Assembly (NCBI RefSeq): GCF_001194135.2
Contig: NC_068983.1
Coordinates: 131,908,170-131,952,817, forward strand
Direction: 5' to 3'
Length of the DNA: 44,648 bases
Origin: Octopus bimaculoides
Taxonomy: Eukaryota
Positions 1 through 40,676 of the stretch are shown one piece after another. The first letter of the stretch is position 1, and every line of letters begins with the position of its first letter. The notes beneath the pieces are model-generated. The model saw nothing but the letters and a program-made list of their open reading frames with translations, was not told where the DNA came from and made no database searches. Both the position numbers and the translations under genes were made by a program.

Positions 1-357
1 AGGTATTTGTAGCTCTCCGCTGGTTCTAACTCTTTTATGACATTTTGCTGGTCAAGGTTCACATTAGATGTATTTGTCATTTTTCCTTTGATAAAGGTAG
101 CTTTTGCACATTTATCAAGGCCAAATTGCATCCTGATGTCATCACTGAATTGTTTAACAATCGCTAGTAGGCCTTTGAGTTGTTGGTCATTTTTTGCAAA
201 GAGCTTTAAATCATCCATGTAAATGAGATGATTTATATTTTTATCAAATATTTTATAACCATACTGTGCATCATTGAGCAATTTTGAGAGCGGTATTAGG
301 GCTAGACAGAAGAGGAGTGGTGATAGTGAGTCACCTTGGAAAATGCCACATATTGAC
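1..357 (-). mobile_element. R4/Dong-clade non-LTR retrotransposon, reverse transcriptase fragment (runs off the left edge)
   Basis: Manual minus-strand translation 350->3 gives 116 stop-free codons: CGIFQGDSLSPLLFCLALIPLSKLL...HLIYMDDLKLFAKN...MQFGLDKCAKA...ESYKY. GIFQGDSLSPLLF, YMDD and FGLDKC are typical of RLE-type (R4/Dong) RTs. Confidence 0.93.
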
Positions 358-360
358 AAC

Positions 361-660
361 ACAAGATCAAAGCTTGCTTAAAAACGCTACCAAGTTAACA
401 TTCTTCAAAATTGTTCTGACCCTAAATGCAGATTCTGCGATACATTTGACGAAACAATAGACTATCTCGTCTCGGGATGTTCTGTGACGACACCAAAGAA
501 GTACGATAATCGACATGATAGTTTAAGGCAGTATTTACAGTGGAAAATATGTAAACACTACAAAATCAGCACTCTTGCTTACTGGTATGAAGATCATCTT
601 GAGGTTGAAGGTAAGAATCTCACTATCCTGTGGGATTTTCCAGTCAATGTTGAATGTTGG
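361..660 (+). mobile_element. R4/Dong-clade relic: CCHC zinc-knuckle region and start of the restriction-like endonuclease
   Basis: Plus-strand translation QDQSL (frameshift) YQVNILQNCSDPKCRFCDTFDETIDYLVSGCSVTTPKKYDNRHDSLRQYLQWKICKHY...LTILWDF. It shows C-x2-C...C, RHD and LWDF motifs; similarity is lost after WDF. Confidence 0.85.
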
Positions 661-1180
661 ACTAAGAAGAAACGTACACATAAATTAGTAGAGAGGAATT
701 AAATGATGGCTATCAGTAAGTAGTACACTGAATATAAGACAATAAATTTGAGACTAGAGGTGTTTAGTCATGTTTCCATCCTCGAGAAACCTCTGTGCAC
801 ACAATGAGATTTCTGTTGAACAAGTAACACAGAAACGCTTCTTTCTATGAAAAATAAACTTATAATGTATCGTAGATGCAAATTGTAGTATAATTGATCA
901 TAAAAAATCGAGCCACCTGGGACTAAACAATTTTATTCGAAACCAAGAATCACTTGCCAATTAATTAGAATCTCCGAAGACGCAATAATTGAGAAAAAAG
1001 AATAAAACGTTAATTTTACAAATTCACTTTAAATCATTGATACTGGTTTGATTGCTTATCAGTGTTTTAATGTTGTTGTCTTTTTCTATTTTTTGCCACA
1101 TGATCTGAGGTTATTATAACATTTCCAACATTATGGTGTATAAAGCAGAATTGTAAGGAAGCAAATTATGTCTTTGTGCA

Positions 1181-6044: not shown

Positions 6045-6613
6045 NNNNNNNNNNNNNNNNNNNNNNNNNNNNNNNNNNNNNNNNNNNNNNNNNNNNNNNN
6101 NNNNNNNNNNNNNNNNNNNNNNNNNNNNNNNNNNNNNNNNNNNNNNNNNNNNNNNNNNNNNNNNNNNNNNNNNNNNNNNNNNNNNNNNNNNNNNNNNNNN
6201 NNNNNNNNNNNNNNNNNNNNNNNNNNNNNNNNNNNNNNNNNNNNNNNNNNNNNNNNNNNNNNNNNNNNNNNNNNNNNNNNNNNNNNNNNNNNNNNNNNNN
6301 NNNNNNNNNNNNNNNNNNNNNNNNNNNNNNNNNNNNNNNNNNNNNNNNNNNNNNNNNNNNNNNNNNNNNNNNNNNNNNNNNNNNNNNNNNNNNNNNNNNN
6401 NNNNNNNNNNNNNNNNNNNNNNNNNNNNNNNNNNNNNNNNNNNNNNNNNNNNNNNNNNNNNNNNNNNNNNNNNNNNNNNNNNNNNNNNNNNNNNNNNNNN
6501 NNNNNNNNNNNNNNNNNNNNNNNNNNNNNNNNNNNNNNNNNNNNNNNNNNNNNNNNNNNNNNNNNNNNNNNNNNNNNNNNNNNNNNNNNNNNNNNNNNNN
6601 NNNNNNNNNNNNN
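6045..6613. other. Assembly gap (N run) between (GT)n and (TA)n
   Basis: N characters. Other gaps: 8329-8338, 8842-9009, 13910-13919, 28180-29116, 32380-32389, 37344-37773, 38839-39491, 40215-40224, 40585-40676. Confidence 1.
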
Positions 6614-8381: not shown

Positions 8382-10829
8382 TGTGCATGAAAGAAAAAAT
8401 AATTATACGTTAATTATTCATTTTCATTATTAACTCTATTTTTATATATTTAGGTAAATATACACTATCATATATATGATGTATCTAATGTGTACGTATC
8501 TATCTGCCTGTGTGTCTGTGCATATGTTTATGTGCGTCTGTGCATATGTATATATGTGTGTATGTGGGGGGTTGTGTCTATATGTACGCTTGTGTATGAG
8601 CGTATATGTCTATATATGTGTATGTGCATATGTGTGTGTGTGTGTGTGTGTGTATGTGTGGATCTATATATATATTTGAATTCACATACATGTTGCTTAA
8701 TGGATCGTGAATTAATTATGAAATATAAATTACCACATAAATTGACAAGAAATCAAATAAATTGATAGATACTTATAATTACTGTGCGTGTGTGTGCCTG
8801 TGTGTGTATGTATGTGAGTACGTATATATATATATATATATNNNNNNNNNNNNNNNNNNNNNNNNNNNNNNNNNNNNNNNNNNNNNNNNNNNNNNNNNNN
8901 NNNNNNNNNNNNNNNNNNNNNNNNNNNNNNNNNNNNNNNNNNNNNNNNNNNNNNNNNNNNNNNNNNNNNNNNNNNNNNNNNNNNNNNNNNNNNNNNNNNN
9001 NNNNNNNNNTATATATATGCATATATGGATAATGACAAGAACGCAATTTTCTTTGTAATCTTTAGCCATATTTATAACGTGATCCACATGTTTTTATATA
9101 ATTGAATTTTGAAGAAATTTTTTTATTGGAATCGTGCGATTAGTAAGTTTAAATTAGTATATTAATATGGATATTTATAATATTTCAGTGTATTACTGAA
9201 TAAATTTATTATTATAGTATATATTATATATAATTTTATTGTCTAGTATTAGATTAATATTTACAAATATTATAATTTATTATAAAACTATATTTGTATA
9301 TTCGTAGTTTAATTAATTTTATAAATTTGAAATTATATCATTTGTTATATCTTTCTCATACTGTACTGTGTTACTTATTCTTCCCCCTTCTCTCAGAACT
9401 GAATAACCTCTGATGCACTGAGTATTATATATGTAATAGAATGCTTTCAACTATGTATCTTTTTTCTCTCACACCAAAATATATTATTTATTTCCCCTCT
9501 CATTATCCTGACAACTTAGGAATTGCTAACACTCATACCCTTCAATATATATCCAATACATATCTTTTACCTGTTTATTTCTGCTCTCATCAGAATGCAT
9601 CTTTATACCATGCACAACGCTGGATCAGCTAGCATTCACTTTCATTTTCCCTCGGTATGGAGTACTGTAAAACAATTCCTTCCCTCTTCTTACCTTGCGG
9701 TACCTCTTAACCAATCTGTCTGATTTACCTAAAGAAAACCCGATCCAACTGGATTTAATTAGACCCTCTTACCATCCTGGACAGAATGAATCATATCGAA
9801 TATCATTGATGAGGAACATTCTCTCAAAGTCTAACCTATATTTATCCGATGTTGGAATATCCAGCTTATAGAGTCTTCATTGTATACAATGCTCCATTAG
9901 CTGAGATATCCTAGAAACAGCTGTTAGACACTGTTACCAGTTTGGACTATTTTTACCATTCGCTATGTAGCTAAATTTTCGGATTGAATTAAATAAAATC
10001 AAATATCTGTGTCCTGCCTTGACTAATTGTTTCCCTTTCCTCACTACTTTAAACTACATATACATATAAATAGAAAGAGAGAGAAAGAGAGAGAGAGAAA
10101 GAAAGAGAATGAGCGAGAGAAAGAGAGAGAAAAGGAAATAGAGAATGAGAGGGAGATAGAATGTTTGTGATTTGTTATAAAATTCATTTTATAAAATGAT
10201 CCTTTTAATACTAAACGACCAACTGTCTCGGCTGGAAAGCCTCCATCATATAAATTTTCCAAGTGAGCTGATCCAACCAACAATAAATTCTTTTCTGAGT
10301 CAGTAATATTTAGCTATCCTCAGTTTTCGCTACACATTCCTCGTCTAAATGAACTCTGATGTTTTCTCCCTTTTATACAAAAATTATGCTCACAATAGTC
10401 TCTCTATTTATAGTCCAATGCCAAGACCAAAACTCAATCTCACAGATAGTGTGATTGTGGAAATGAAATTTATACACAGTTCCCTTGAATTATTTATCAA
10501 ATCGATTTGTAACGTTCTTAAGAAAAGAGAATTGTTGGAGTTAGTTTTACCGATGTTAATATATACATTTGCATGAGTGGATTTATTTGGAATTTAACGT
10601 TTATTTACATGAGATCTAATTTACTTGTTCTTTTATAACTTTCCCTTATTCAACACTAGAGAGTGATGTTATCTCGCCTGACACAAAAACCACTCAACAA
10701 TGTATGATGTCTTCTCGCATATGAAATTGTTTTCTACTCAGAAATCACTCAATATTGCCATCTTTTATATACGCCACTGTATAATTATTTATTGAACAGT
10801 CTTTCATATATATTCAGTAACTCCCATCA

Positions 10830-11010
<181 letters not shown>

Positions 11011-11014
11011 TATA

Positions 11015-11205
11015 ATAGCTTCAAATTTTGGCCCATGAGCTGCTATTTCGAGGGATGGAGTAAGTCGACCACATCGACGCCTGTATTAAACTGGTTCTTA
11101 TTTTACCGACCTCGAAGTATGAAAGGCAAAGTCGACCTACGTGGAATTTGAACTCGGAACGTGAAGAAGAATTAGCGCTGAGGAATTTGATCACCGCCTT
11201 AACAA
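11015..11205 (-). mobile_element. SINE family A, decayed
   Basis: ATGAAAGGCAAAGTCGACCTACGTGGAATTTGAACTCGGAACG is the reverse complement of the family A core; the 3' tail points into the (TAA) tract. Confidence 0.82.
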
Positions 11206-21452: not shown

Positions 21453-22499
21453 AATATTATAATACATTATATATGCTTTAAAAATTTACATAACACTGCA
21501 GCTTCATGTATTTTAATCGATTCCTGATGAGTCTCAGTTTGAAGTGAAACGTCAATACAAACTTCGAACTTTCTGTTTATCTTCAATCTCTGCCTTTAAA
21601 AAGAGACTAAATATATCATTATTAGACGTGCTATATAATTCTCGCTTATATATATTTTGCATGTAGTTCAGGAAGTTTGCATTATGAAACTACATCTTAA
21701 TTTTTGCAGTGTTGTGATGTTATTCTCTTCGTATTTCTTCTCCCTACTGAAAGCTTTGACGCTGCAAGTCACTATCTTTCTACTCTACTACTGACTTCCT
21801 TTATCGCTACCTATTTCTCATTCCATTCAGCTTTCTCTTTTTCACAAATTTAATACAATCTAAATTATCTTACTTCTCCTTCCCCTTTTTACTGCTTCAT
21901 ATTTTCCAGTTGCTTCACACCTCCCATTCTTTGCTGCATATTATTGCTTTAATATAATTTTCATACGCTATCATATGTTTTCTATCCTTTATGTCTCTCC
22001 TTTAATGCTTTCCTTTCTATTTTTAACAATAGTACCAATTTTTCCTTTCTGCTACCTTCAGTTTACATACGGTCTTCCCTAGAGTTTTAGGTTTCCATCT
22101 CTCTAACATCTACTCATTAGGATTTCTATATTTCTCATTCTTATATTGTTTGCTTAAGTTCTCATTGTACTATCCCCACGTTTGCATTTATAAACACCTT
22201 AATTTTAAGTTAAAATTGCATTTTTATTTAGGTAAATCTTATTTCAATTTTAAAAAATATATATAATTGCATTATTTAGTGTGTCGACTCACGCATAAAT
22301 GAAAAAGCCACATATTGGTTGTGTACCCAATTTATCTCGCACACATAAAATTTTACTTCCCGCTTAATTGATAATAATCAATTCATACTTCATGTTTCTG
22401 AAACTGACGTGTCGTACCAGCATAATTATCAGCATCAATGTAGACACATATGGTTGTGCCACTCATAAAATGGTCATTCTCTCTTGTGAATGATTTCGT

Positions 22500-27372: not shown

Positions 27373-29149
27373 GTGAGTGCCTCTAATGTTACTCGCATCC
27401 TGTATATTAAATCCTCGTCAGTAACGTAATTTATAGAATGATTAATTAATTTGTAAATATAGCAAAGTTAATACAAGTGTAACACCGAGGTGAAATTGAG
27501 ATTAAATTAGAATTCAGTATGATATGATGATAATTAACGTTGACACTTTTATTCGTAGTTTAGTATAATATACGAGTGCAAGAATGACCTTAAAAGTAAT
27601 TTGTTTGCATTTACTTTCTTGTTTCTTGTGTCGCTCTCATAATTCTTCATTCTATTCATAACACCGAAACACACACACAAACAGACGTATATGCACACAA
27701 TTAATCATGCGGTACACGTGAAATTTATACTTAAAGAAAGTGTTAAAGACTAATAAATATATGTTTCTGCTTGTATATTAAGGGGAAATGCATGGGAAAT
27801 GGCTATTCCTAAAGAATAGATAAACGAACAACAGAAAATAATTCATTCAGTTCACCAGCACACAATTATAAAATAAAGTTTTGTGGTACTAAATGGCACA
27901 CAGAAAAATAGTTCCTGACATAAAATTGAGTATTTAAGTTGGAGAAAAAGCAAATAAAACTATTAGTAATTTTTGATGACTCTCATAGAAAAAGAAGATA
28001 TAACGCAAAACATTAAGGATTAATCACTCCTAATTAATCGCCAACTTAATCTTTATTTTGCAAGCAAGCGACAGTTACGCTATGTATATACCATACTGGA
28101 CCTCATGAGCAAAGTATTGGCTATTGGAGTCTGCTTTTATCATTCGAATAACCTTATATGTATATATATATATATATATNNNNNNNNNNNNNNNNNNNNN
28201 NNNNNNNNNNNNNNNNNNNNNNNNNNNNNNNNNNNNNNNNNNNNNNNNNNNNNNNNNNNNNNNNNNNNNNNNNNNNNNNNNNNNNNNNNNNNNNNNNNNN
28301 NNNNNNNNNNNNNNNNNNNNNNNNNNNNNNNNNNNNNNNNNNNNNNNNNNNNNNNNNNNNNNNNNNNNNNNNNNNNNNNNNNNNNNNNNNNNNNNNNNNN
28401 NNNNNNNNNNNNNNNNNNNNNNNNNNNNNNNNNNNNNNNNNNNNNNNNNNNNNNNNNNNNNNNNNNNNNNNNNNNNNNNNNNNNNNNNNNNNNNNNNNNN
28501 NNNNNNNNNNNNNNNNNNNNNNNNNNNNNNNNNNNNNNNNNNNNNNNNNNNNNNNNNNNNNNNNNNNNNNNNNNNNNNNNNNNNNNNNNNNNNNNNNNNN
28601 NNNNNNNNNNNNNNNNNNNNNNNNNNNNNNNNNNNNNNNNNNNNNNNNNNNNNNNNNNNNNNNNNNNNNNNNNNNNNNNNNNNNNNNNNNNNNNNNNNNN
28701 NNNNNNNNNNNNNNNNNNNNNNNNNNNNNNNNNNNNNNNNNNNNNNNNNNNNNNNNNNNNNNNNNNNNNNNNNNNNNNNNNNNNNNNNNNNNNNNNNNNN
28801 NNNNNNNNNNNNNNNNNNNNNNNNNNNNNNNNNNNNNNNNNNNNNNNNNNNNNNNNNNNNNNNNNNNNNNNNNNNNNNNNNNNNNNNNNNNNNNNNNNNN
28901 NNNNNNNNNNNNNNNNNNNNNNNNNNNNNNNNNNNNNNNNNNNNNNNNNNNNNNNNNNNNNNNNNNNNNNNNNNNNNNNNNNNNNNNNNNNNNNNNNNNN
29001 NNNNNNNNNNNNNNNNNNNNNNNNNNNNNNNNNNNNNNNNNNNNNNNNNNNNNNNNNNNNNNNNNNNNNNNNNNNNNNNNNNNNNNNNNNNNNNNNNNNN
29101 NNNNNNNNNNNNNNNNATATATATATATAGCTAGTAGGTTTTACATTGT

Positions 29150-34525: not shown

Positions 34526-37500
34526 CGCTACAGTAAAAAAATAAATTACATATTGGTTGACATATAAACTGCTCAGATTGTACTTATTGTTTCTGTCAAT
34601 ATAATTTCCGATGACGAATATTCAAATCAGTGTATCTTAAATTTTATCATAACAACTATCTACTTTGGAAGGAAGGAAGGCATATATAAAGGATATAAGC
34701 GACGGAGATTATAAAAACTGGGCCCATTGAAAACAGTTTTAATGAACTAAGTTACTAACTAGCTGATAAATAAGCCATTTGATTTTGCTAATCATATTTA
34801 AATTTAATTTCAAATATAATTTATATTTAATTCAATTTTAATATCATTTTATAGTACTCGTTTCAACAAACTCTGAGTTGTAGTTCTCACTTTTCATTTG
34901 TTTGATGGGATCTAACATCACGGATATATATTTTGATGTACATCTATCTACTCTGTCCAACATCCTGTTTGAGTTTCTAGTTGAATAAATACCAATCAAC
35001 AAAGGCATATGATATGCTTATTATTTGTGTTATTATCTGTAGGAACAATCATTTAGTCATACTGATTGTGAGTCTCTGGTTGTTTGGCTTTTAGTTAAGG
35101 AAGAATATTTATACAAGGATGACACTGCTAATTTCCATTCAGTTGATATTTATTCAGTATTTTTAAAGACTAAGGAAAAAGTAACGACACAGATAAAAGA
35201 GCTTCAAATGGCAAAATGAGCATACTCAATATGTTTTAAACAGGAAAATCAAGGTTAATCAACCAATTATTGAAGTCAAAGACCATTTGGATAGGAAATA
35301 TCTTGTAATCGAAGTATGAATACAAGCAGAATTAATGCACCTGAACAAGAAACAAATTATAGATATGTCTTAAAATAAAAATAACGAGAATGCTGGGGTG
35401 CAAAACATATAACTCATTTAATATTTTGCGCATTAGAAATGATTAAAGTTTGTTAAGAAACTTCCATAGCCAAAACACTATGCTATGCGCAAAATCCTGG
35501 ATATATCACTACTAGTTGGTCTGAATATATTACGTTCAGCACGTCTGATATAATAAATCCTTCAAAATAAAAACAATACATTGTACATACCCTACGTTTA
35601 CAGAACTGAAATAGGTGTGCAGTGAAAGTGAAGAATATAATTAACACCATCGAAAACAATAAACATGTTAAATGCATATGCAAAACATGAGCAACTTTCA
35701 TTAACTATCATGCTAGCATAAGACCGGAAGAAATACAGCTTATATTTACTGAAACAGTTTATAAAGAAGATAGGGAACAGACATAAGTTCATAGAAAATC
35801 ACAAGAAGTACCTGGAGCAATATAACCAATTAACTTGATTCAGTATATTACTGCTATTCCTTGGTTCATTTGGAAAAGCTAAAAAAAATAAAGATAATAA
35901 AGGAAAATCATTCACGGGAGTCTTCAGAACAGCATGGAAAAAACTACATACCGAAATTGCATAACATCCGAAATCGGAGAAATTGGAGATGGTTTGTGTA
36001 GGCAATAACTAGAAGAAGAGTTTAGAGTACAGCTTGTTAAGTTCACTCGTAGTGATAAGTGATGAATTTAACTTTTCAGAACAAGATCCCTCGTTTGAGG
36101 GAGAGAAAGCAATTGTGAGAAGACAGTGAGATAGGGAGGGAAAGGTTGGGAAATAGAGAGAGAGCAGTGAATTACTGGTGCTGTCTCTTAGGCTCACGCA
36201 ATGAGGCATTCAATTCTAAATTCAATTCTTGTATCATCCTTTATCTCACTTTTGTGGCATCTTATCTATACTCATAGACATGAATGCTTCGATTATGCCC
36301 GCATAAGAAATGCTAAAGAAAGGAAGAAATAGTATGTTTAACACGAGTACCTCGCTCTCATCAAAAGCATAACATTATCTCGATGTTTGCGTAACAGCAG
36401 ACAACCGAAGACTAGATTCTAAAGAAAACAGTTTTAGTTTCCTGTATTAAATCAGTTATTTTGTTGTTTACAAGTTATAATAGATCATTAATCTAATCAA
36501 ATGGAATTAATGCTAAATATTATCTGCAGACACCTTCAGGAAAATGGTTAAATAATACGGAATTATAATATTGGCAATTTTATTTCTTTTATAATATATT
36601 CTAAGTATTCTGCCTTTAAATTCGGGAAACGTGAAGAACTGGTTTATATGAAAAAAAAAACAAACCTAATTCAGGAAAAAAATAATTGAGAAATAGATAA
36701 GAATTAGAATGTATTTTGGTGAAATGGCATAAATATTATATTAGACAATATATACCCTGCAGTTACAACAGTTCTCTTTAAACAAATATCAGGCGGTTAT
36801 GTAGTTAGGCAGCCTTTAGACACCATTATTTTCTTATTTCATTTACGTAGGTTTGTGTCGGAAGATATTTCGTTACGTCTATAAATAGTAGTGTTTGTGT
36901 TAATGTGAGCTCCTATTTAAGATATGCTATATGTTGTAATATACGGAACTTCTGAGTGTTAATGTCGTCAAAAACTGGCAATTTTGTATAAAATTAATAT
37001 GATTAGTCTGTTGTGTCTGAGGAGAATCATTTTCTTTTTGTACCTTATAATCTAACACACACTCACCTGTAAATTTTCCACTTATTTTTATTTTCCTAAA
37101 CATTTCGTTGCGTCTTGCAAACTTTTCAAGAGTCAACACCATTGAAAAGGTTGCAATACACGCGCATGCGTACATGTATACATACTTATCTACATACATG
37201 CAAACATATTTACACACACACACATATACATATATAGCCGAAAATATGCATATGTATGCATGAACGCATGCGCGTGTATTTATCTATGCACATTCACATG
37301 CCTACACATATGCACAGCATATATATATATATATATATATATANNNNNNNNNNNNNNNNNNNNNNNNNNNNNNNNNNNNNNNNNNNNNNNNNNNNNNNNN
37401 NNNNNNNNNNNNNNNNNNNNNNNNNNNNNNNNNNNNNNNNNNNNNNNNNNNNNNNNNNNNNNNNNNNNNNNNNNNNNNNNNNNNNNNNNNNNNNNNNNNN

Positions 37501-38050
37501 NNNNNNNNNNNNNNNNNNNNNNNNNNNNNNNNNNNNNNNNNNNNNNNNNNNNNNNNNNNNNNNNNNNNNNNNNNNNNNNNNNNNNNNNNNNNNNNNNNNN
37601 NNNNNNNNNNNNNNNNNNNNNNNNNNNNNNNNNNNNNNNNNNNNNNNNNNNNNNNNNNNNNNNNNNNNNNNNNNNNNNNNNNNNNNNNNNNNNNNNNNNN
37701 NNNNNNNNNNNNNNNNNNNNNNNNNNNNNNNNNNNNNNNNNNNNNNNNNNNNNNNNNNNNNNNNNNNNNNNNNTATATATATGCTTTTAGTGAAATGTTA
37801 GAATCCTCATCTCTTTGCGTTACAATCACGGTTCTTTTACCTTATCTCCTGTGGTTATTTATTGCCTCACACTGTATTTATTCATTTCTCACTCTCAAAT
37901 GTTATCCATTGCTGACGAACATCTCTTAATGAAACTTAGCTTGCACCTTCTCTTAATAATCCTGTGGACAAGCATTTAATTGTAATACACCTTTTTATAA
38001 TACATCTCTTATTTAATTCATATTTATTACACAATAAATTTGGATATAAT

Positions 38051-38838: not shown

Positions 38839-39515
38839 NNNNNNNNNNNNNNNNNNNNNNNNNNNNNNNNNNNNNNNNNNNNNNNNNNNNNNNNNNNNNN
38901 NNNNNNNNNNNNNNNNNNNNNNNNNNNNNNNNNNNNNNNNNNNNNNNNNNNNNNNNNNNNNNNNNNNNNNNNNNNNNNNNNNNNNNNNNNNNNNNNNNNN
39001 NNNNNNNNNNNNNNNNNNNNNNNNNNNNNNNNNNNNNNNNNNNNNNNNNNNNNNNNNNNNNNNNNNNNNNNNNNNNNNNNNNNNNNNNNNNNNNNNNNNN
39101 NNNNNNNNNNNNNNNNNNNNNNNNNNNNNNNNNNNNNNNNNNNNNNNNNNNNNNNNNNNNNNNNNNNNNNNNNNNNNNNNNNNNNNNNNNNNNNNNNNNN
39201 NNNNNNNNNNNNNNNNNNNNNNNNNNNNNNNNNNNNNNNNNNNNNNNNNNNNNNNNNNNNNNNNNNNNNNNNNNNNNNNNNNNNNNNNNNNNNNNNNNNN
39301 NNNNNNNNNNNNNNNNNNNNNNNNNNNNNNNNNNNNNNNNNNNNNNNNNNNNNNNNNNNNNNNNNNNNNNNNNNNNNNNNNNNNNNNNNNNNNNNNNNNN
39401 NNNNNNNNNNNNNNNNNNNNNNNNNNNNNNNNNNNNNNNNNNNNNNNNNNNNNNNNNNNNNNNNNNNNNNNNNNNNNNNNNNNNNNNNNNNTATATATAT
39501 ATATATATATATATA

Positions 39516-39666
39516 TTAGTAGTTCTTTGACTGCTATTTCTAAATTTTCAGTATGTTGGTGAAGCAATCTCATGCTGATCCCTATATACTTATAATTATA
39601 AATGTTTTTACCAATAAAGGGCTTTTTTTGCATACGGAACTACTTGGCAAAAGTGTTGATTATTAA
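39516..39666 (+). repeat. 151-bp direct repeat, copy 1
   Basis: Aligns without indels to 40064-40214 with 8 substitutions. Confidence 0.95.
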
Positions 39667-39907
39667 TTTTATTAACTAATTGGCAATTCCCTGCCTTATA
39701 TCTGTATTTATATTGATGGTCTTCTATTGGATGGTTAAAATGCAGTCTTTTTTTGCGGGACTATTTGTGGCGCACATGGGGTAATTCTTGAGGAGAGATG
39801 CGGAACTCACTGGTCGATAAATTTGTGAATGCATTTTCTAATGTGATTTTGATGTCGCATGGTCAAATACACATGAGTATATGTGCATTTTCAGGTTTAT
39901 TTTGTAC

Positions 39908-39966
39908 ATCATGCTGATGAGTGGAAAAGAATATTATATTCTTAATCACGAAACGTCGTACATGAT
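39908..39966 (+). ncRNA. Type I hammerhead ribozyme motif (minimal helix III, Penelope/retrozyme type)
   Basis: Helix I AUCAUG (39908-13) pairs with CAUGAU (39961-66). CUGAUGA at 39914-20. Helix II GUGG/UCAC, a 2x2 AA/AA loop, then AAGAAUA/UAUUCUU. GAAA at 39950-53. Helix III A-C-[GUC]-G-U. Cleavage triplet GUA, predicted cut 3' of A39960. All core nucleotides are present. Confidence 0.88.
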
Positions 39967-40063
39967 TAACTAAAGGCAAGTTTGTTTTTATTTTCTGTTC
40001 TGTTTTTGTTCTATGTGTGCCGTAAATATCGCCATCCGTTAGAGAAAAAATTGTAGTTTAGAA

Positions 40064-40214
40064 TTAGTAGTTCTTTGACTGGTATTTCTAAATTTTCAGT
40101 ATGTTGGTGAAGCAATCTCATGCTGATCCCTATATATTTATAATTATAAATATTTTTACCGATAAAGGTCTTTTTTTGCATACTGAACTACTTGGCAAAA
40201 TTGTTAATTATTAA
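40064..40214 (+). repeat. 151-bp direct repeat, copy 2 (ends at a gap)
   Basis: Matches 39516-39666; period 548 bp; cut off by the 10-N gap at 40215. Confidence 0.95.
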
Positions 40215-40224
40215 NNNNNNNNNN

Positions 40225-40283
<59 letters not shown>

Positions 40284-40676
40284 TATACATACATATATAT
40301 ATACATATATGTATAAATACCTACATATATATATACATATGTAACTGTACTCATACATATACATGGTGCGATGGTTAAATTGCCGCCCTATTATATTTTT
40401 TATTTCGCACATGCACCTTGCTTTATTTTATTTTGTCAACTACACAGTATGGTAGGGTCAGTGACTGTAAATATATCACCTGCTCTGACCAGTAATCTTC
40501 ATGCTTGCAGCAAATGTGAACTACTTTGCAAATCGTTAGTATTCGATTTAAGCATTACAACTGACAAAGAAAGAGTACGCTTTCNNNNNNNNNNNNNNNN
40601 NNNNNNNNNNNNNNNNNNNNNNNNNNNNNNNNNNNNNNNNNNNNNNNNNNNNNNNNNNNNNNNNNNNNNNNNNNNN

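What the first reader, a model, noticed from the sequence alone, without database searches (positions are those of the whole stretch)
39908..39966. Complete type I hammerhead ribozyme hidden in non-coding DNA
The sequence AUCAUG CUGAUGA GUGG AA AAGAAUA UUA UAUUCUU AA UCAC GAAA C GUC G U A CAUGAU satisfies the whole hammerhead consensus. It has C3-U4-G5-A6-N7-G8-A9, G10.1-C11.1, G12-A13-A14, A15.1-U16.1, H17=A (GUA triplet) and a perfect 6-bp helix I. Helix II is unusually long, with a 2x2 A-rich internal loop that could dock with a weak bulged extension of helix I (39901-07 with 39967-74). The predicted self-cleavage is 3' of A39960. No ORF or annotation explains it, and it is the only intact one among the CUGANGA hits I checked on both strands.
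Basis: partly seen in the sequence, partly recalled or inferred. Interest (0 to 1): 0.9.

Follow-up and report, generated by a model that had tools for sequence, protein, structure and literature searches.

The report
Octopus hammerhead ribozyme in retrozyme-like repeat
The flagged 59 bases are a genuine-looking self-cleaving hammerhead RNA motif of the type common in invertebrate mobile repeats, sitting in a short, highly foldable repeat in an octopus genome; it is a new example of a known kind, and its activity is untested.

Summary
The motif is at 39908-39966 (+) exactly as described. It has the full hammerhead core, a perfect 6-bp helix I, a 4-bp helix II base extended by an AA/AA internal loop and a perfect 7-bp hairpin, and a minimal helix III (ACG-U-CGU).

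It is the only such site in the window. A strict descriptor expects about 2e-5 per window by chance, and about one per 2-Gb genome. Rfam Hammerhead_1 aligns to it end to end but scores 20.2 bits, below the gathering score of 34.

Features outside the descriptor argue against chance:
- GUAC-AUC..G, shared with the N79 ribozyme and the Rfam consensus.
- The canonical 6-bp/4-bp geometry.
- A mussel-like helix III.

The window is octopus DNA. The motif lies on a 723-bp contig between assembly gaps and (TA)n tracts. That contig holds 1.28 copies of a 548-bp, 32% GC unit. As a circular + strand RNA the unit folds far better than shuffles (z -4.7 to -5.7, 36 G·U pairs). The opposite strand does not.

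Best reading: a non-LTR retrozyme-like element whose hammerhead probably needs a tandem or dimeric context. No second hammerhead, paralogue or covariation could be obtained, and catalysis is untested.

The parts
39908..39966 (+). Type I hammerhead motif. The predicted cleavage is between A39960 and C39961.
   Evidence: Read directly. It is the only descriptor hit. Rfam RF00163 matches it full length at 20.2 bits.
39904..39907 (+). GUAC, the 5' side of the internal loop (loop 1) just beyond the 6-bp helix I
   Evidence: The same four bases sit at the same place in the N79 hammerhead (GGTAC ATCCAG CTGATGAG). They are also present in metagenomic type I hammerheads L001-L003, but those were selected with GTAC in the pattern.
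39914..39920 (+). Catalytic core strand C3 U4 G5 A6 U7 G8 A9
39921..39949 (+). Helix II. It has a 4-bp base (GUGG/UCAC), a 2x2 AA/AA internal loop (39925-26 / 39944-45), a perfect 7-bp distal stem (39927-33 / 39937-43) and a UUA loop.
   Evidence: The probability of a perfect 7-bp hairpin in a random 21-mer of local composition is 0.0013.
39950..39960 (+). G12 A13 A14, then helix III A-C-(GUC)-G-U, which reads as the near-palindrome ACG-U-CGU, then A17
   Evidence: Rfam aligns it to the consensus ACG[2]CGU. A self-duplex of two copies is predicted at -6.7 kcal/mol.
39515..39666 (+). Direct repeat copy 1 (start of unit 1), immediately after (TA)13
   Evidence: 94.7% identical over 152 bp to 40063-40214
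40063..40214 (+). Direct repeat copy 2 (start of unit 2). It is cut off by a 10-N assembly gap.
   Evidence: The similarity runs to the last base before the gap.
39515..40062 (+). One 548-bp repeat unit (32% GC) that contains the hammerhead
   Evidence: Folded as a circular RNA, the + strand has an MFE of -146 kcal/mol, z = -4.7 (this version) or -5.7 (the version using copy 2), with 36 G.U pairs. The minus strand gives z -1.4 / -2.5. Fourteen control segments give z -1.1 to +1.7.
39762..39784 (+). 5' arm of a 23-bp long-range helix, pairing with 40006-40028 (7 G.U pairs)
40006..40028 (+). 3' arm of the 23-bp long-range helix
39492..39516 (.). (TA)13 flanking the element on the left. It is preceded by the 653-N gap at 38839-39491.
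40225..40361 (.). (AT)n-rich microsatellite flanking the element on the right. It is preceded by the 10-N gap at 40215-40224.

Best explanation
This is a hammerhead ribozyme of the canonical metazoan type I kind, carried by a non-coding, AT-rich, about 548-nt repeat unit in an octopus genome. The element resembles the non-LTR 'retrozymes' of invertebrates.

Proposed mechanism:
1. The + strand is transcribed by read-through. This is inferred; no promoter was found.
2. The hammerhead cuts between A39960 and C39961. Its monomeric helix III is only 2 bp, and ACG-U-CGU is a near-palindrome, so efficient cleavage most likely needs two hammerheads from tandem units to form a shared, longer helix III (the 'double hammerhead').
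3. Two cuts would release a 548-nt monomer. A host ligase could circularise it into a very stable, highly base-paired RNA.
4. More-than-unit-length reverse transcription of such a circle by a retrotransposon enzyme supplied in trans, followed by insertion into a (TA)n tract, would give the 1.28-unit, terminally redundant copy seen here.

Shown here: the motif, its rarity by chance, its resemblance to known type I hammerheads beyond the core, the partial tandem, and the strand-specific fold.

Inferred: transcription, cleavage, circularisation, mobilisation, and whether this particular copy is still active.
For: - The core and helices are intact and unique in the window. The chance expectation is about 2e-5 per window.
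- Rfam Hammerhead_1 aligns end to end at exactly these coordinates. The candidate matches the consensus at non-core positions too: AU at both ends of helix I, U10.2-A11.2, and ACG/CGU in helix III. The two middle pairs of helix I are changed on both sides, C-G to A-U and A-U to U-A.
- GUAC-AUC..G-CUGAUGAGU is identical to the N79 ribozyme.
- Its geometry is that described for canonical metazoan type I hammerheads: helix I 6 bp, helix II 4 bp before the loops, and helix III 1-2 bp with a small palindromic loop. These act as dimers and sit in low-GC tandem repeats (PMC4209133; PMC7229834; PMC7761336).
- The mussel retrozyme hammerhead has helix III ACGCGCGU. An axolotl retrozyme cleaves after GUA.
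- The hammerhead fold is less stable than the predicted MFE by 6.6 kcal/mol. This gap is no worse than for a natural weak-helix-III hammerhead, 9.8 kcal/mol.
- The dimeric helix III is predicted at -6.7 kcal/mol.
- The context is a 548-bp period with 152-bp terminal redundancy at 94.7% identity, running into a gap, and (TA)n on both sides.
- The unit has 32% GC and no ORF with homologues.
- Folded as a circle, the + strand gives z -4.7 to -5.7, against -1.4 to -2.5 for the minus strand and -1.1 to +1.7 for 14 controls. The 36 G.U pairs work only on the hammerhead strand.
- The window is octopus DNA. The best hit of its LINE RT fragment is Octopus vulgaris at 87%.
Against: - The Rfam score (20.2) is below the gathering score (34). 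There was no hit in the standard whole-window scan.
- Only one hammerhead is assembled, so release of a monomer cannot be shown. The second copy, if any, lies in the 10-N gap.
- Loop 2 is replaced by an internal loop plus a 17-nt hairpin. This is not the canonical 4-6-nt loop and may weaken or abolish the tertiary contact.
- Helix III has a central U.U in the dimer and is weaker than in the comparators.
- The predicted MFE pairs core bases 39915-19 with 39954-58, an inactive fold.
- The 548-nt unit is larger than the usual 150-450 nt.
- No paralogue or orthologue was found: 0 hits in the metagenome, GTDB and viral scans, 0 for ORF-based searches, and 0 hammerheads or unit matches in 82 kb of related DNA fetched via the RT hits (one locus confirmed as Octopus vulgaris). 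No octopus genome could be searched at the DNA level, so there is no covariation evidence.
- The two repeat copies differ by 5%, so this copy is old and may be a fossil.
Confidence: 0.65

Rival explanations
1. It is a remnant or non-autonomous derivative of a Penelope-like element (PLE). On this reading the hammerhead is the kind carried in PLE pseudo-LTRs, and the partial tandem and (TA)n flanks are the signature of PLE integration.
For: - PLEs carry type I hammerheads with very short palindromic helix III and enlarged helix II. They act as dimers and occur mostly as dispersed single motifs from truncated copies (PMC4209133).
- PLEs form partial tandems (pseudo-LTRs), break short-read assemblies and favour microsatellite targets such as (TA)n (PMC8557442).
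- This matches the (TA)n-DR-X-DR-gap-(TA)n layout.
Against: - The hallmarks of PLE minimal hammerheads are missing. There is no extra nucleotide between A9 and G10.1. Helix I is 6 bp with a loop 1, not 4-5 bp. Helix II is 4 bp plus a loop plus a stem, not one 6-8 bp stem.
- No PLE reverse transcriptase or GIY-YIG ORF was seen. The only RT is an RVT_1 LINE fragment 39 kb away.
- The hammerhead lies outside the duplicated segment as assembled.
- PLEs are proposed to mobilise retrozymes, so the integration signature does not discriminate between the two readings.
Confidence: 0.15
2. It is a dead relic: the sequence descends from a real hammerhead element, but this copy no longer cleaves. The loop 2 insertion, the one-base-short helix III and the solitary state would make it a molecular fossil with no present function.
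For: - The two repeat copies differ by 5.3%, which implies age.
- Loop 2 carries a 17-nt hairpin in place of the usual 6-nt loop, and helix III lacks one base relative to the Rfam and mussel ACG-NN-CGU.
- The inactive alternative pairing is favoured.
- No second hammerhead is assembled, and no paralogues were found.
Against: - All 15 core positions and every base pair of helices I and II are intact.
- The helix II extension is a perfect 7-bp stem (p about 0.001 by chance), which looks built rather than decayed.
- The whole unit keeps an exceptional, strand-specific fold.
Confidence: 0.15
3. It is a chance match to the hammerhead consensus in AT-rich non-coding DNA.
For: - The Rfam score is below the curated threshold.
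- A strict descriptor is expected about once per 2-Gb genome by chance (extrapolated).
- No homologues were found.
Against: - The expectation in this window is about 2e-5.
- There is extra identity to known hammerheads outside the descriptor (GUAC-AUC, GU/AC, ACG/CGU).
- The extension of helix II is perfect.
- The location is in a partial tandem whose hammerhead strand alone folds exceptionally well.
Confidence: 0.05

Closest known systems
Metazoan non-LTR retrozymes with canonical type I hammerheads (coral, mussel, axolotl; Cervera & de la Pena 2020, PMC7229834)
   Same: - A type I hammerhead with a 6-bp helix I, a 4-bp helix II base and a very short near-palindromic helix III.
- A low-GC, non-coding repeat unit in head-to-tail arrangement.
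- A highly self-paired predicted circular RNA.
- No LTR, PBS or PPT.
- The mussel hammerhead shares GAGU...ACGAAACG..CGU.
   Different: - The unit is 548 nt, against the usual 150-450.
- Only 1.28 units and one hammerhead are assembled.
- Loop 2 is an AA/AA internal loop capped by a 7-bp hairpin, not a 4-6-nt loop.
- Helix III is ACG-U-CGU (odd length, with U.U in the dimer).
- The predicted fold is more stable relative to shuffles than the coral and mussel examples (z -5 against -1 to -3).
- Expression and copy number are unknown.
Schistosoma-type hammerhead (N79 ribozyme; Rfam RF00163 Hammerhead_1)
   Same: - GUAC loop-1 strand, AUC..G / C..GAU helix I, CUGAUGAGU, and ACGAAACG...CGU.
- That N79 derives from the Schistosoma mansoni hammerhead is from my own knowledge, not from a tool.
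   Different: - The two middle helix I pairs differ, both changes compensatory.
- Loop 2 is 21 nt, against 6 nt (CAAAUA).
- The cleavage triplet is GUA, not GUC.
- The score is 20.2 bits, below the gathering score of 34.
Minimal hammerheads of Penelope-like elements (Cervera & de la Pena 2014, PMC4209133)
   Same: - Type I, with an enlarged helix II and a palindromic or minimal helix III.
- A presumed dimer mechanism.
- Association with partial tandems and microsatellite targets.
   Different: - There is no bulged nucleotide between A9 and G10.1.
- Helix I is the full 6 bp and has a loop 1.
- No PLE ORF is nearby.
Newt satellite 2 and avocado sunblotch viroid hammerheads (double-hammerhead mechanism, Forster et al. 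1988, cited in PMC6155905)
   Same: - A monomeric helix III too weak to be stable.
- Two tandem copies can form one extended helix III.
   Different: Dimer cleavage is demonstrated for those RNAs. Here it is only predicted (-6.7 kcal/mol, with a central U.U mismatch).

Membership tests
Hammerhead ribozyme, type I (Rfam RF00163) | Conserved core C3-U4-G5-A6-N7-G8-A9, G12-A13-A14, A15.1-U16.1, H17 | tested here: met
   All positions are present at 39914-20, 39950-53 and 39959-60.
Hammerhead ribozyme, type I (Rfam RF00163) | Three helices around the core, with helix I open and helices II and III closed | tested here: met
   Helix I is 6 Watson-Crick bp and helix II is 4+7 bp. Helix III is only 2 bp plus a 3-nt loop, which is marginal.
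Hammerhead ribozyme, type I (Rfam RF00163) | Score at or above the curated gathering score (34 bits) | tested here: not met
   The score is 20.2 bits, with a full-length alignment to model positions 1-45. Most of the loss comes from the 25-nt insertion against 10 in helix II and from A17.
Hammerhead ribozyme, type I (Rfam RF00163) | Compensatory changes in the helices among homologues | tested here: inconclusive
   No homologue could be retrieved. The only support is two double changes in helix I relative to the Rfam consensus.
Hammerhead ribozyme, type I (Rfam RF00163) | Site-specific self-cleavage giving 2',3'-cyclic phosphate and 5'-OH ends | not testable with these tools
   This needs in vitro transcription or RNA end mapping.
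Canonical metazoan type I hammerhead / non-LTR retrozyme | Helix I of 6 bp and helix II of 4 bp, each followed by loops that interact | tested here: inconclusive
   The 6-bp and 4-bp spacing is met, and loop 1 has GUAC as in N79. Loop 2, however, is an AA/AA internal loop plus a hairpin, and the tertiary contact cannot be assessed.
Canonical metazoan type I hammerhead / non-LTR retrozyme | Helix III of 1-2 bp with a small palindromic loop (dimer-capable) | tested here: met
   It is A-U and C-G plus a GUC loop. ACG-U-CGU self-pairs as 3+3 bp with a central U.U, at -6.7 kcal/mol.
Canonical metazoan type I hammerhead / non-LTR retrozyme | Head-to-tail tandem repeats (dimers to multimers), each unit with a hammerhead | tested here: inconclusive
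   The period is 548 bp, with 1.28 units and one hammerhead. Unit 2 is cut by a 10-N gap, and a 653-N gap lies upstream.
Canonical metazoan type I hammerhead / non-LTR retrozyme | Low GC (<45-50%), non-coding, no LTR/PBS/PPT | tested here: met
   GC is 0.32. ORFs are 56 aa or shorter and have no homologue. There is no Pol III B box.
Canonical metazoan type I hammerhead / non-LTR retrozyme | The monomer is predicted to form a stable, highly self-paired circular RNA | tested here: met
   z is -4.7 / -5.7 with 68% of bases paired, on the + strand only. Controls give -1.1 to +1.7, and known coral and mussel retrozymes give -1 to -3.
Canonical metazoan type I hammerhead / non-LTR retrozyme | Multi-copy family in the genome, expressed as linear and circular RNA | not testable with these tools
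   No octopus genome or transcriptome can be searched at the DNA level here. There were 0 copies in 82 kb of sampled related DNA.
Penelope-like element minimal hammerhead | Unpaired nucleotide between A9 and G10.1 | tested here: not met
   A39920 is followed directly by G39921, which pairs with C39949.
Penelope-like element minimal hammerhead | Short helix I (4-5 bp) without a defined loop 1, and a continuous helix II of 6-8 bp | tested here: not met
   Helix I is 6 bp plus a GUAC loop. Helix II is 4 bp, then an internal loop, then 7 bp.
Penelope-like element minimal hammerhead | Located in the pseudo-LTR of an element encoding RT plus GIY-YIG endonuclease | tested here: not met
   No such ORF is in the window. 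The only RT is an RVT_1 LINE fragment at 3-377.

The most novel reading that the evidence does not exclude
The octopus element may represent a distinct structural subclass of type I hammerhead. In it, the loop 2 partner of the tertiary contact would be an A-rich internal loop inside an extended helix II, rather than a terminal loop. It would be carried by an unusually large (548-nt) and unusually stable circular RNA. The many G.U pairs on one strand could record selection, or A-to-G editing, acting on the RNA itself. That would point to an RNA-level life cycle in a cephalopod, an animal group for which I found no report of retrozymes.
Probability: 0.15. Interest if true: 0.55.

Novelty: new member of a known kind. 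Interest (0 to 1): 0.35.

Why it matters
If confirmed, it would add cephalopods to the animals that carry hammerhead-bearing retrozyme-like repeats. It would also give a natural example of a type I hammerhead with an extended, internally looped helix II, which is useful for understanding how much the loop-loop contact can vary.

The strand-specific, G.U-rich fold of the unit is a clean computational sign that the RNA, not the DNA, was the selected form.

It does not open a new class. Type I hammerheads in invertebrate tandem repeats and retroelements have been known since 1987 and were surveyed widely in 2010-2020.

Tried and rejected
- **Rfam, whole window, gathering threshold:** nothing. At E<=10 on 701 nt, only microsatellite-driven miRNA look-alikes at 40225-40300 appeared. 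I rejected these as low-complexity artefacts.
- **Other copies in the window:** BLAST of 39600-40250 against the window gave only the 152-bp direct repeat and (TA)n. The relaxed descriptor gave no second hammerhead.
- **Exact-pattern scans for this variant** (CTGATGAGTGG..TCACGAAACGNCGT): 0 in metagenome contigs and 0 in GTDB genomes. A looser GTAC...CTGATGAGT...ACGAAAC pattern gave 4 metagenome loci, three of them canonical type I hammerheads used as comparators. It gave 0 viral loci and 3 bacterial MAG loci that I did not examine.
- **ORF-based routes to paralogues:**
  - Exact look-up of the 30-aa ORF over the hammerhead and of a 154-aa ORF: not on record.
  - Homology search with the 56-aa ORF of the direct repeat: no candidate.
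  - I left the third protein search and the representative-library search unused, because the remaining ORFs are 39 aa or shorter and the repeat ORF had already failed.
- **Sampling related DNA** around LINE RT hits (Octopus vulgaris chromosome plus two ENA assemblies, 82 kb): no hammerhead and no match to the unit. The sample is too small to be informative.
- **SINE-like Pol III origin,** as proposed for Schistosoma Sm-alpha: no tRNA, no B box, and only 2-mismatch A-box look-alikes. Rejected.
- **Cave-cricket pDo500 satellite** (about 500-bp unit with a hammerhead): I read the paper and found no specific similarity. Dropped.
- **Plant-type LTR retrozyme:** rejected, because the hammerhead is not inside the repeated segment and is type I, not type III.
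- **Pfam scan of ten ORFs:** only RVT_1 at the window start.

Full report
**1. The observation**

Numbered in the hammerhead convention:
- Helix I, 5' strand: AUCAUG (39908-13).
- Core: C3-A9 = CUGAUGA (39914-20).
- Helix II: G10.1-C11.1, U-A, G-C, G.U (39921-24 with 39946-49). It continues with an AA/AA internal loop (39925-26, 39944-45), a perfect 7-bp stem (39927-33 with 39937-43) and a UUA loop.
- G12 A13 A14 at 39950-52.
- Helix III: A15.1-U16.1 and C-G closing a GUC loop (39953-59).
- A17 at 39960.
- Helix I, 3' strand: CAUGAU (39961-66).

A descriptor I wrote finds this site and nothing else on either strand, even with relaxed helix lengths. The other six CUGANGA...GAAA matches in the window lack the helices.

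**2. Is it more than chance?**

I searched 30 Mb of second-order Markov sequence modelled on the window. The strict descriptor never matched. The version without helix I matched 19 times.

With about 4e-4 for six Watson-Crick pairs at this composition, that gives roughly 2e-5 expected per window and about one per 2-Gb genome. This arithmetic is mine.

Rfam gives no hit at curated thresholds. In a sensitive search of 86 nt, Hammerhead_1 (RF00163) aligns over its whole length to exactly 39908-39966, at 20.2 bits against a gathering score of 34. Rescaled by me to one family and the whole window, the E-value is about 7e-4. Rescaled to a whole octopus genome it would not be significant.

So the consensus match alone is strong for this window but not proof at genome scale.

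**3. Features the descriptor did not ask for**

- **Match to the Rfam consensus at non-core positions.** The Rfam alignment shows the candidate agreeing with the family consensus at AU at the outer end of helix I, G2.1-C1.1, U10.2-A11.2, and ACG...CGU in helix III. The two middle pairs of helix I are changed on both sides.
- **Match to N79.** The N79 ribozyme is printed in a protocol paper as GCAG GTAC ATCCAG CTGATGAGTCC CAAATA GGACGAAAC...GTC CTGGAT TCCA CTGC. From my own knowledge, it derives from the Schistosoma mansoni hammerhead. The candidate reads UUUU GUAC AUCAUG CUGAUGAGUGG [...] UCACGAAACGUCGUA CAUGAU UAAC UAAA. It therefore shares the GUAC on the 5' side of loop 1 and the AUC..G of helix I.
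- **Canonical geometry.** The literature defines canonical metazoan type I hammerheads by a 6-bp helix I and a 4-bp helix II whose loops interact, and a helix III of 1-2 bp with a 2-4-nt palindromic loop (PMC4209133). The candidate has exactly 6 bp and 4 bp before its two internal loops.
- **Mollusc-like helix III.** The mussel retrozyme hammerhead has helix III ACGCGCGU, and an axolotl retrozyme cleaves after GUA. The candidate's ACG-U-CGU and GUA are close relatives of these.
- **A built-looking extension.** The 7-bp extension of helix II is perfect. Such a hairpin has probability 0.0013 in a random 21-mer of local composition.

Together these make a chance origin very unlikely. I put it at about 5%.

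**4. Where the window comes from**

The window is full of microsatellites and has ten runs of N. It has no tRNA and no long real ORF.

A reverse-transcriptase fragment at 3-377 (-) matches Pfam RVT_1. Its best database hit, at 87% identity, is a predicted protein of Octopus vulgaris. The window is therefore a draft octopus scaffold. The exact species was not determined.

**5. The context of the motif**

The motif sits on a 723-bp contig (39492-40214) between a 653-N gap and a 10-N gap. The layout is:
- (TA)13
- a 152-bp segment (39515-39666)
- 396 bp containing the hammerhead
- the same 152-bp segment again (40063-40214, 94.7% identical), which runs right up to the gap
- after the gap, 137 bp of (AT)n-rich repeat

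This is 1.28 copies of a 548-bp unit, embedded in a TA microsatellite. Whether more units exist is hidden by the gaps. Only one hammerhead is assembled.

**6. The unit as an RNA**

Folded as a 548-nt circle, the + strand has a minimum free energy of -146.6 kcal/mol, against -110.9 +/- 6.3 for dinucleotide shuffles. That is z = -5.7, and z = -4.7 for the version using repeat copy 1.

Comparisons:
- Fourteen other 548-nt pieces of the window give z between -1.1 and +1.7.
- The opposite strand reaches only -83.5 to -87 kcal/mol (z -1.4 and -2.5).
- The + strand fold uses 36 G.U pairs. The minus strand uses 4-7.
- The longest helix, 39762-84 with 40006-28, has 23 pairs, of which 7 are G.U.

G.U pairs become A.C mismatches on the other strand. 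The structure is therefore a property of the RNA of the + strand, which is also the hammerhead strand.

Two experimentally characterised retrozymes from the literature, coral and mussel, give z of -1 to -3 by the same method.

**7. Can it cleave?**

For a monomer, the hammerhead secondary structure is 6.6 kcal/mol less stable than the predicted optimum. In that optimum, U4-G8 pair with 39954-58.

The comparators behave as follows:
- A natural canonical hammerhead with an equally weak helix III (metagenomic L001) shows a larger gap, 9.8 kcal/mol.
- The engineered N79, with its long helix III, folds correctly.

Two copies of ACGUCGU can form a 3+3-bp intermolecular helix III with a central U.U, at -6.7 kcal/mol. 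The corresponding figures are -8.9 for a newt-like ACGCGU and -12.5 for L001.

This is the pattern described for newt, axolotl and many other metazoan type I hammerheads. They cleave poorly alone and well as tandem dimers.

I therefore expect weak or no monomer activity, and activity in tandem transcripts if a second copy exists. The replacement of loop 2 by an internal loop plus a hairpin may weaken the tertiary contact. I cannot evaluate that here.

**8. Interpretation**

The best-supported reading is a non-LTR retrozyme-like element. In this model a non-coding, low-GC repeat is transcribed and cut by its type I hammerhead. The released monomer is circularised by a host ligase, and a retrotransposon enzyme supplied in trans copies it back into DNA. 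Rolling reverse transcription of the circle gives more-than-unit-length insertions (model in PMC4209133, PMC7229834 and PMC7761336).

The 1.28-unit copy with terminal redundancy fits that model. So does its position inside (TA)n, a microsatellite type reported as a preferred target of some Penelope-like elements, which are the proposed mobilisers.

The main rival is a direct Penelope-like remnant. It is less likely because the hammerhead lacks the hallmarks of the PLE minimal variant: the bulged base after A9, the short helix I without a loop, and the continuous 6-8-bp helix II. No PLE ORF is present either.

A separate question is whether this copy is still active or a fossil. The 5% divergence between the two repeat copies shows that it is not young.

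**9. What could not be done**

None of the DNA-searchable collections holds octopus genomes. As a result:
- Exact-pattern scans found nothing.
- ORF-based routes found nothing.
- 82 kb of related DNA (one O. vulgaris locus plus unidentified ENA assemblies) contains no hammerhead and no copy of the unit.

Copy number, conservation and covariation therefore remain untested.

**10. Verdict**

It is a new member of a known kind, with two unusual traits: the extended, internally looped helix II, and the very stable 548-nt unit. Interest is moderate to low for a specialist, at 0.35.

Noticed in passing
window 3-377 (-) and 382-699 (+): There is a LINE-type reverse-transcriptase fragment (Pfam RVT_1, YMDD motif). 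Its best hit is a predicted protein of Octopus vulgaris at 87% identity, which identifies the window as octopus DNA. Next to it, on the opposite strand, is a Cys-rich ORF (CRFC...SGC) with no Pfam hit.
   Followed up: partly
window 6045-6613, 8329-38, 8842-9009, 13910-19, 28180-29116, 32380-89, 37344-37773, 38839-39491, 40215-24, 40585-40676: There are ten runs of N (assembly gaps), most of them bordered by (TA)n, (TG)n or (CT)n microsatellites. The long 'ORFs' listed across them are artefacts of N being translated as X.
   Followed up: yes
window 39515-40062 (+): The predicted fold of the repeat unit uses 36 G.U pairs on the + strand, against 4-7 on the minus strand. The + strand is U- and G-rich (A 27, C 13.5, G 19, U 40%). 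This may reflect selection on the RNA, or A-to-G changes fixed through an RNA intermediate (octopuses edit RNA heavily). I did not test it.
   Followed up: partly
window 40225-40300: Sub-threshold Rfam matches to mir-297, mir-1277, mir-3149 and RUF21 (32 bits or less, against gathering scores of 60-100) fall entirely in the (TA)n/(TACA)n microsatellite. They are low-complexity artefacts.
   Followed up: yes
window 21524-21549 (+): CTGATGAGTCTCAGTTTGAAGTGAAA carries both hammerhead boxes at the right spacing but has no helix II pairing and no helix I or III. The descriptor does not recover it.
   Followed up: yes
window 10830-11017: There is a compound perfect trinucleotide microsatellite, (TTC)25 (TAC)26 (TAA)14. 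There are also (AAG)33 at 2734-2833 and (AAT)23 at 1540-1609. The density of simple repeats is unusually high throughout the window.
   Followed up: no
L009, L010, L011 (ENA assemblies ERZ25067570 and ERZ25878469): Long contigs (up to 9.5 Mb), labelled as ENA assemblies, carry LINE RT copies 70-80% identical to the one in the window. ORF-level gene calls go down to 32 aa. These look like animal (probably mollusc) genomic DNA. No hammerhead and no copy of the 548-bp unit occurs in the 62 kb read from them.
   Followed up: partly
L001-L003 (metagenome contigs OFHQ01030653.1, OFHR01017301.1, OFES01012310.1): Three near-identical canonical type I hammerheads were found: GUAC ACAGUG CUGAUGA GUCU-CAACAA-GGAC GAAAC AGCU GUC UACUGU. 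Their helix III is 2 bp with a palindromic loop. I used them as natural comparators. Their host organism is unknown.
   Followed up: partly
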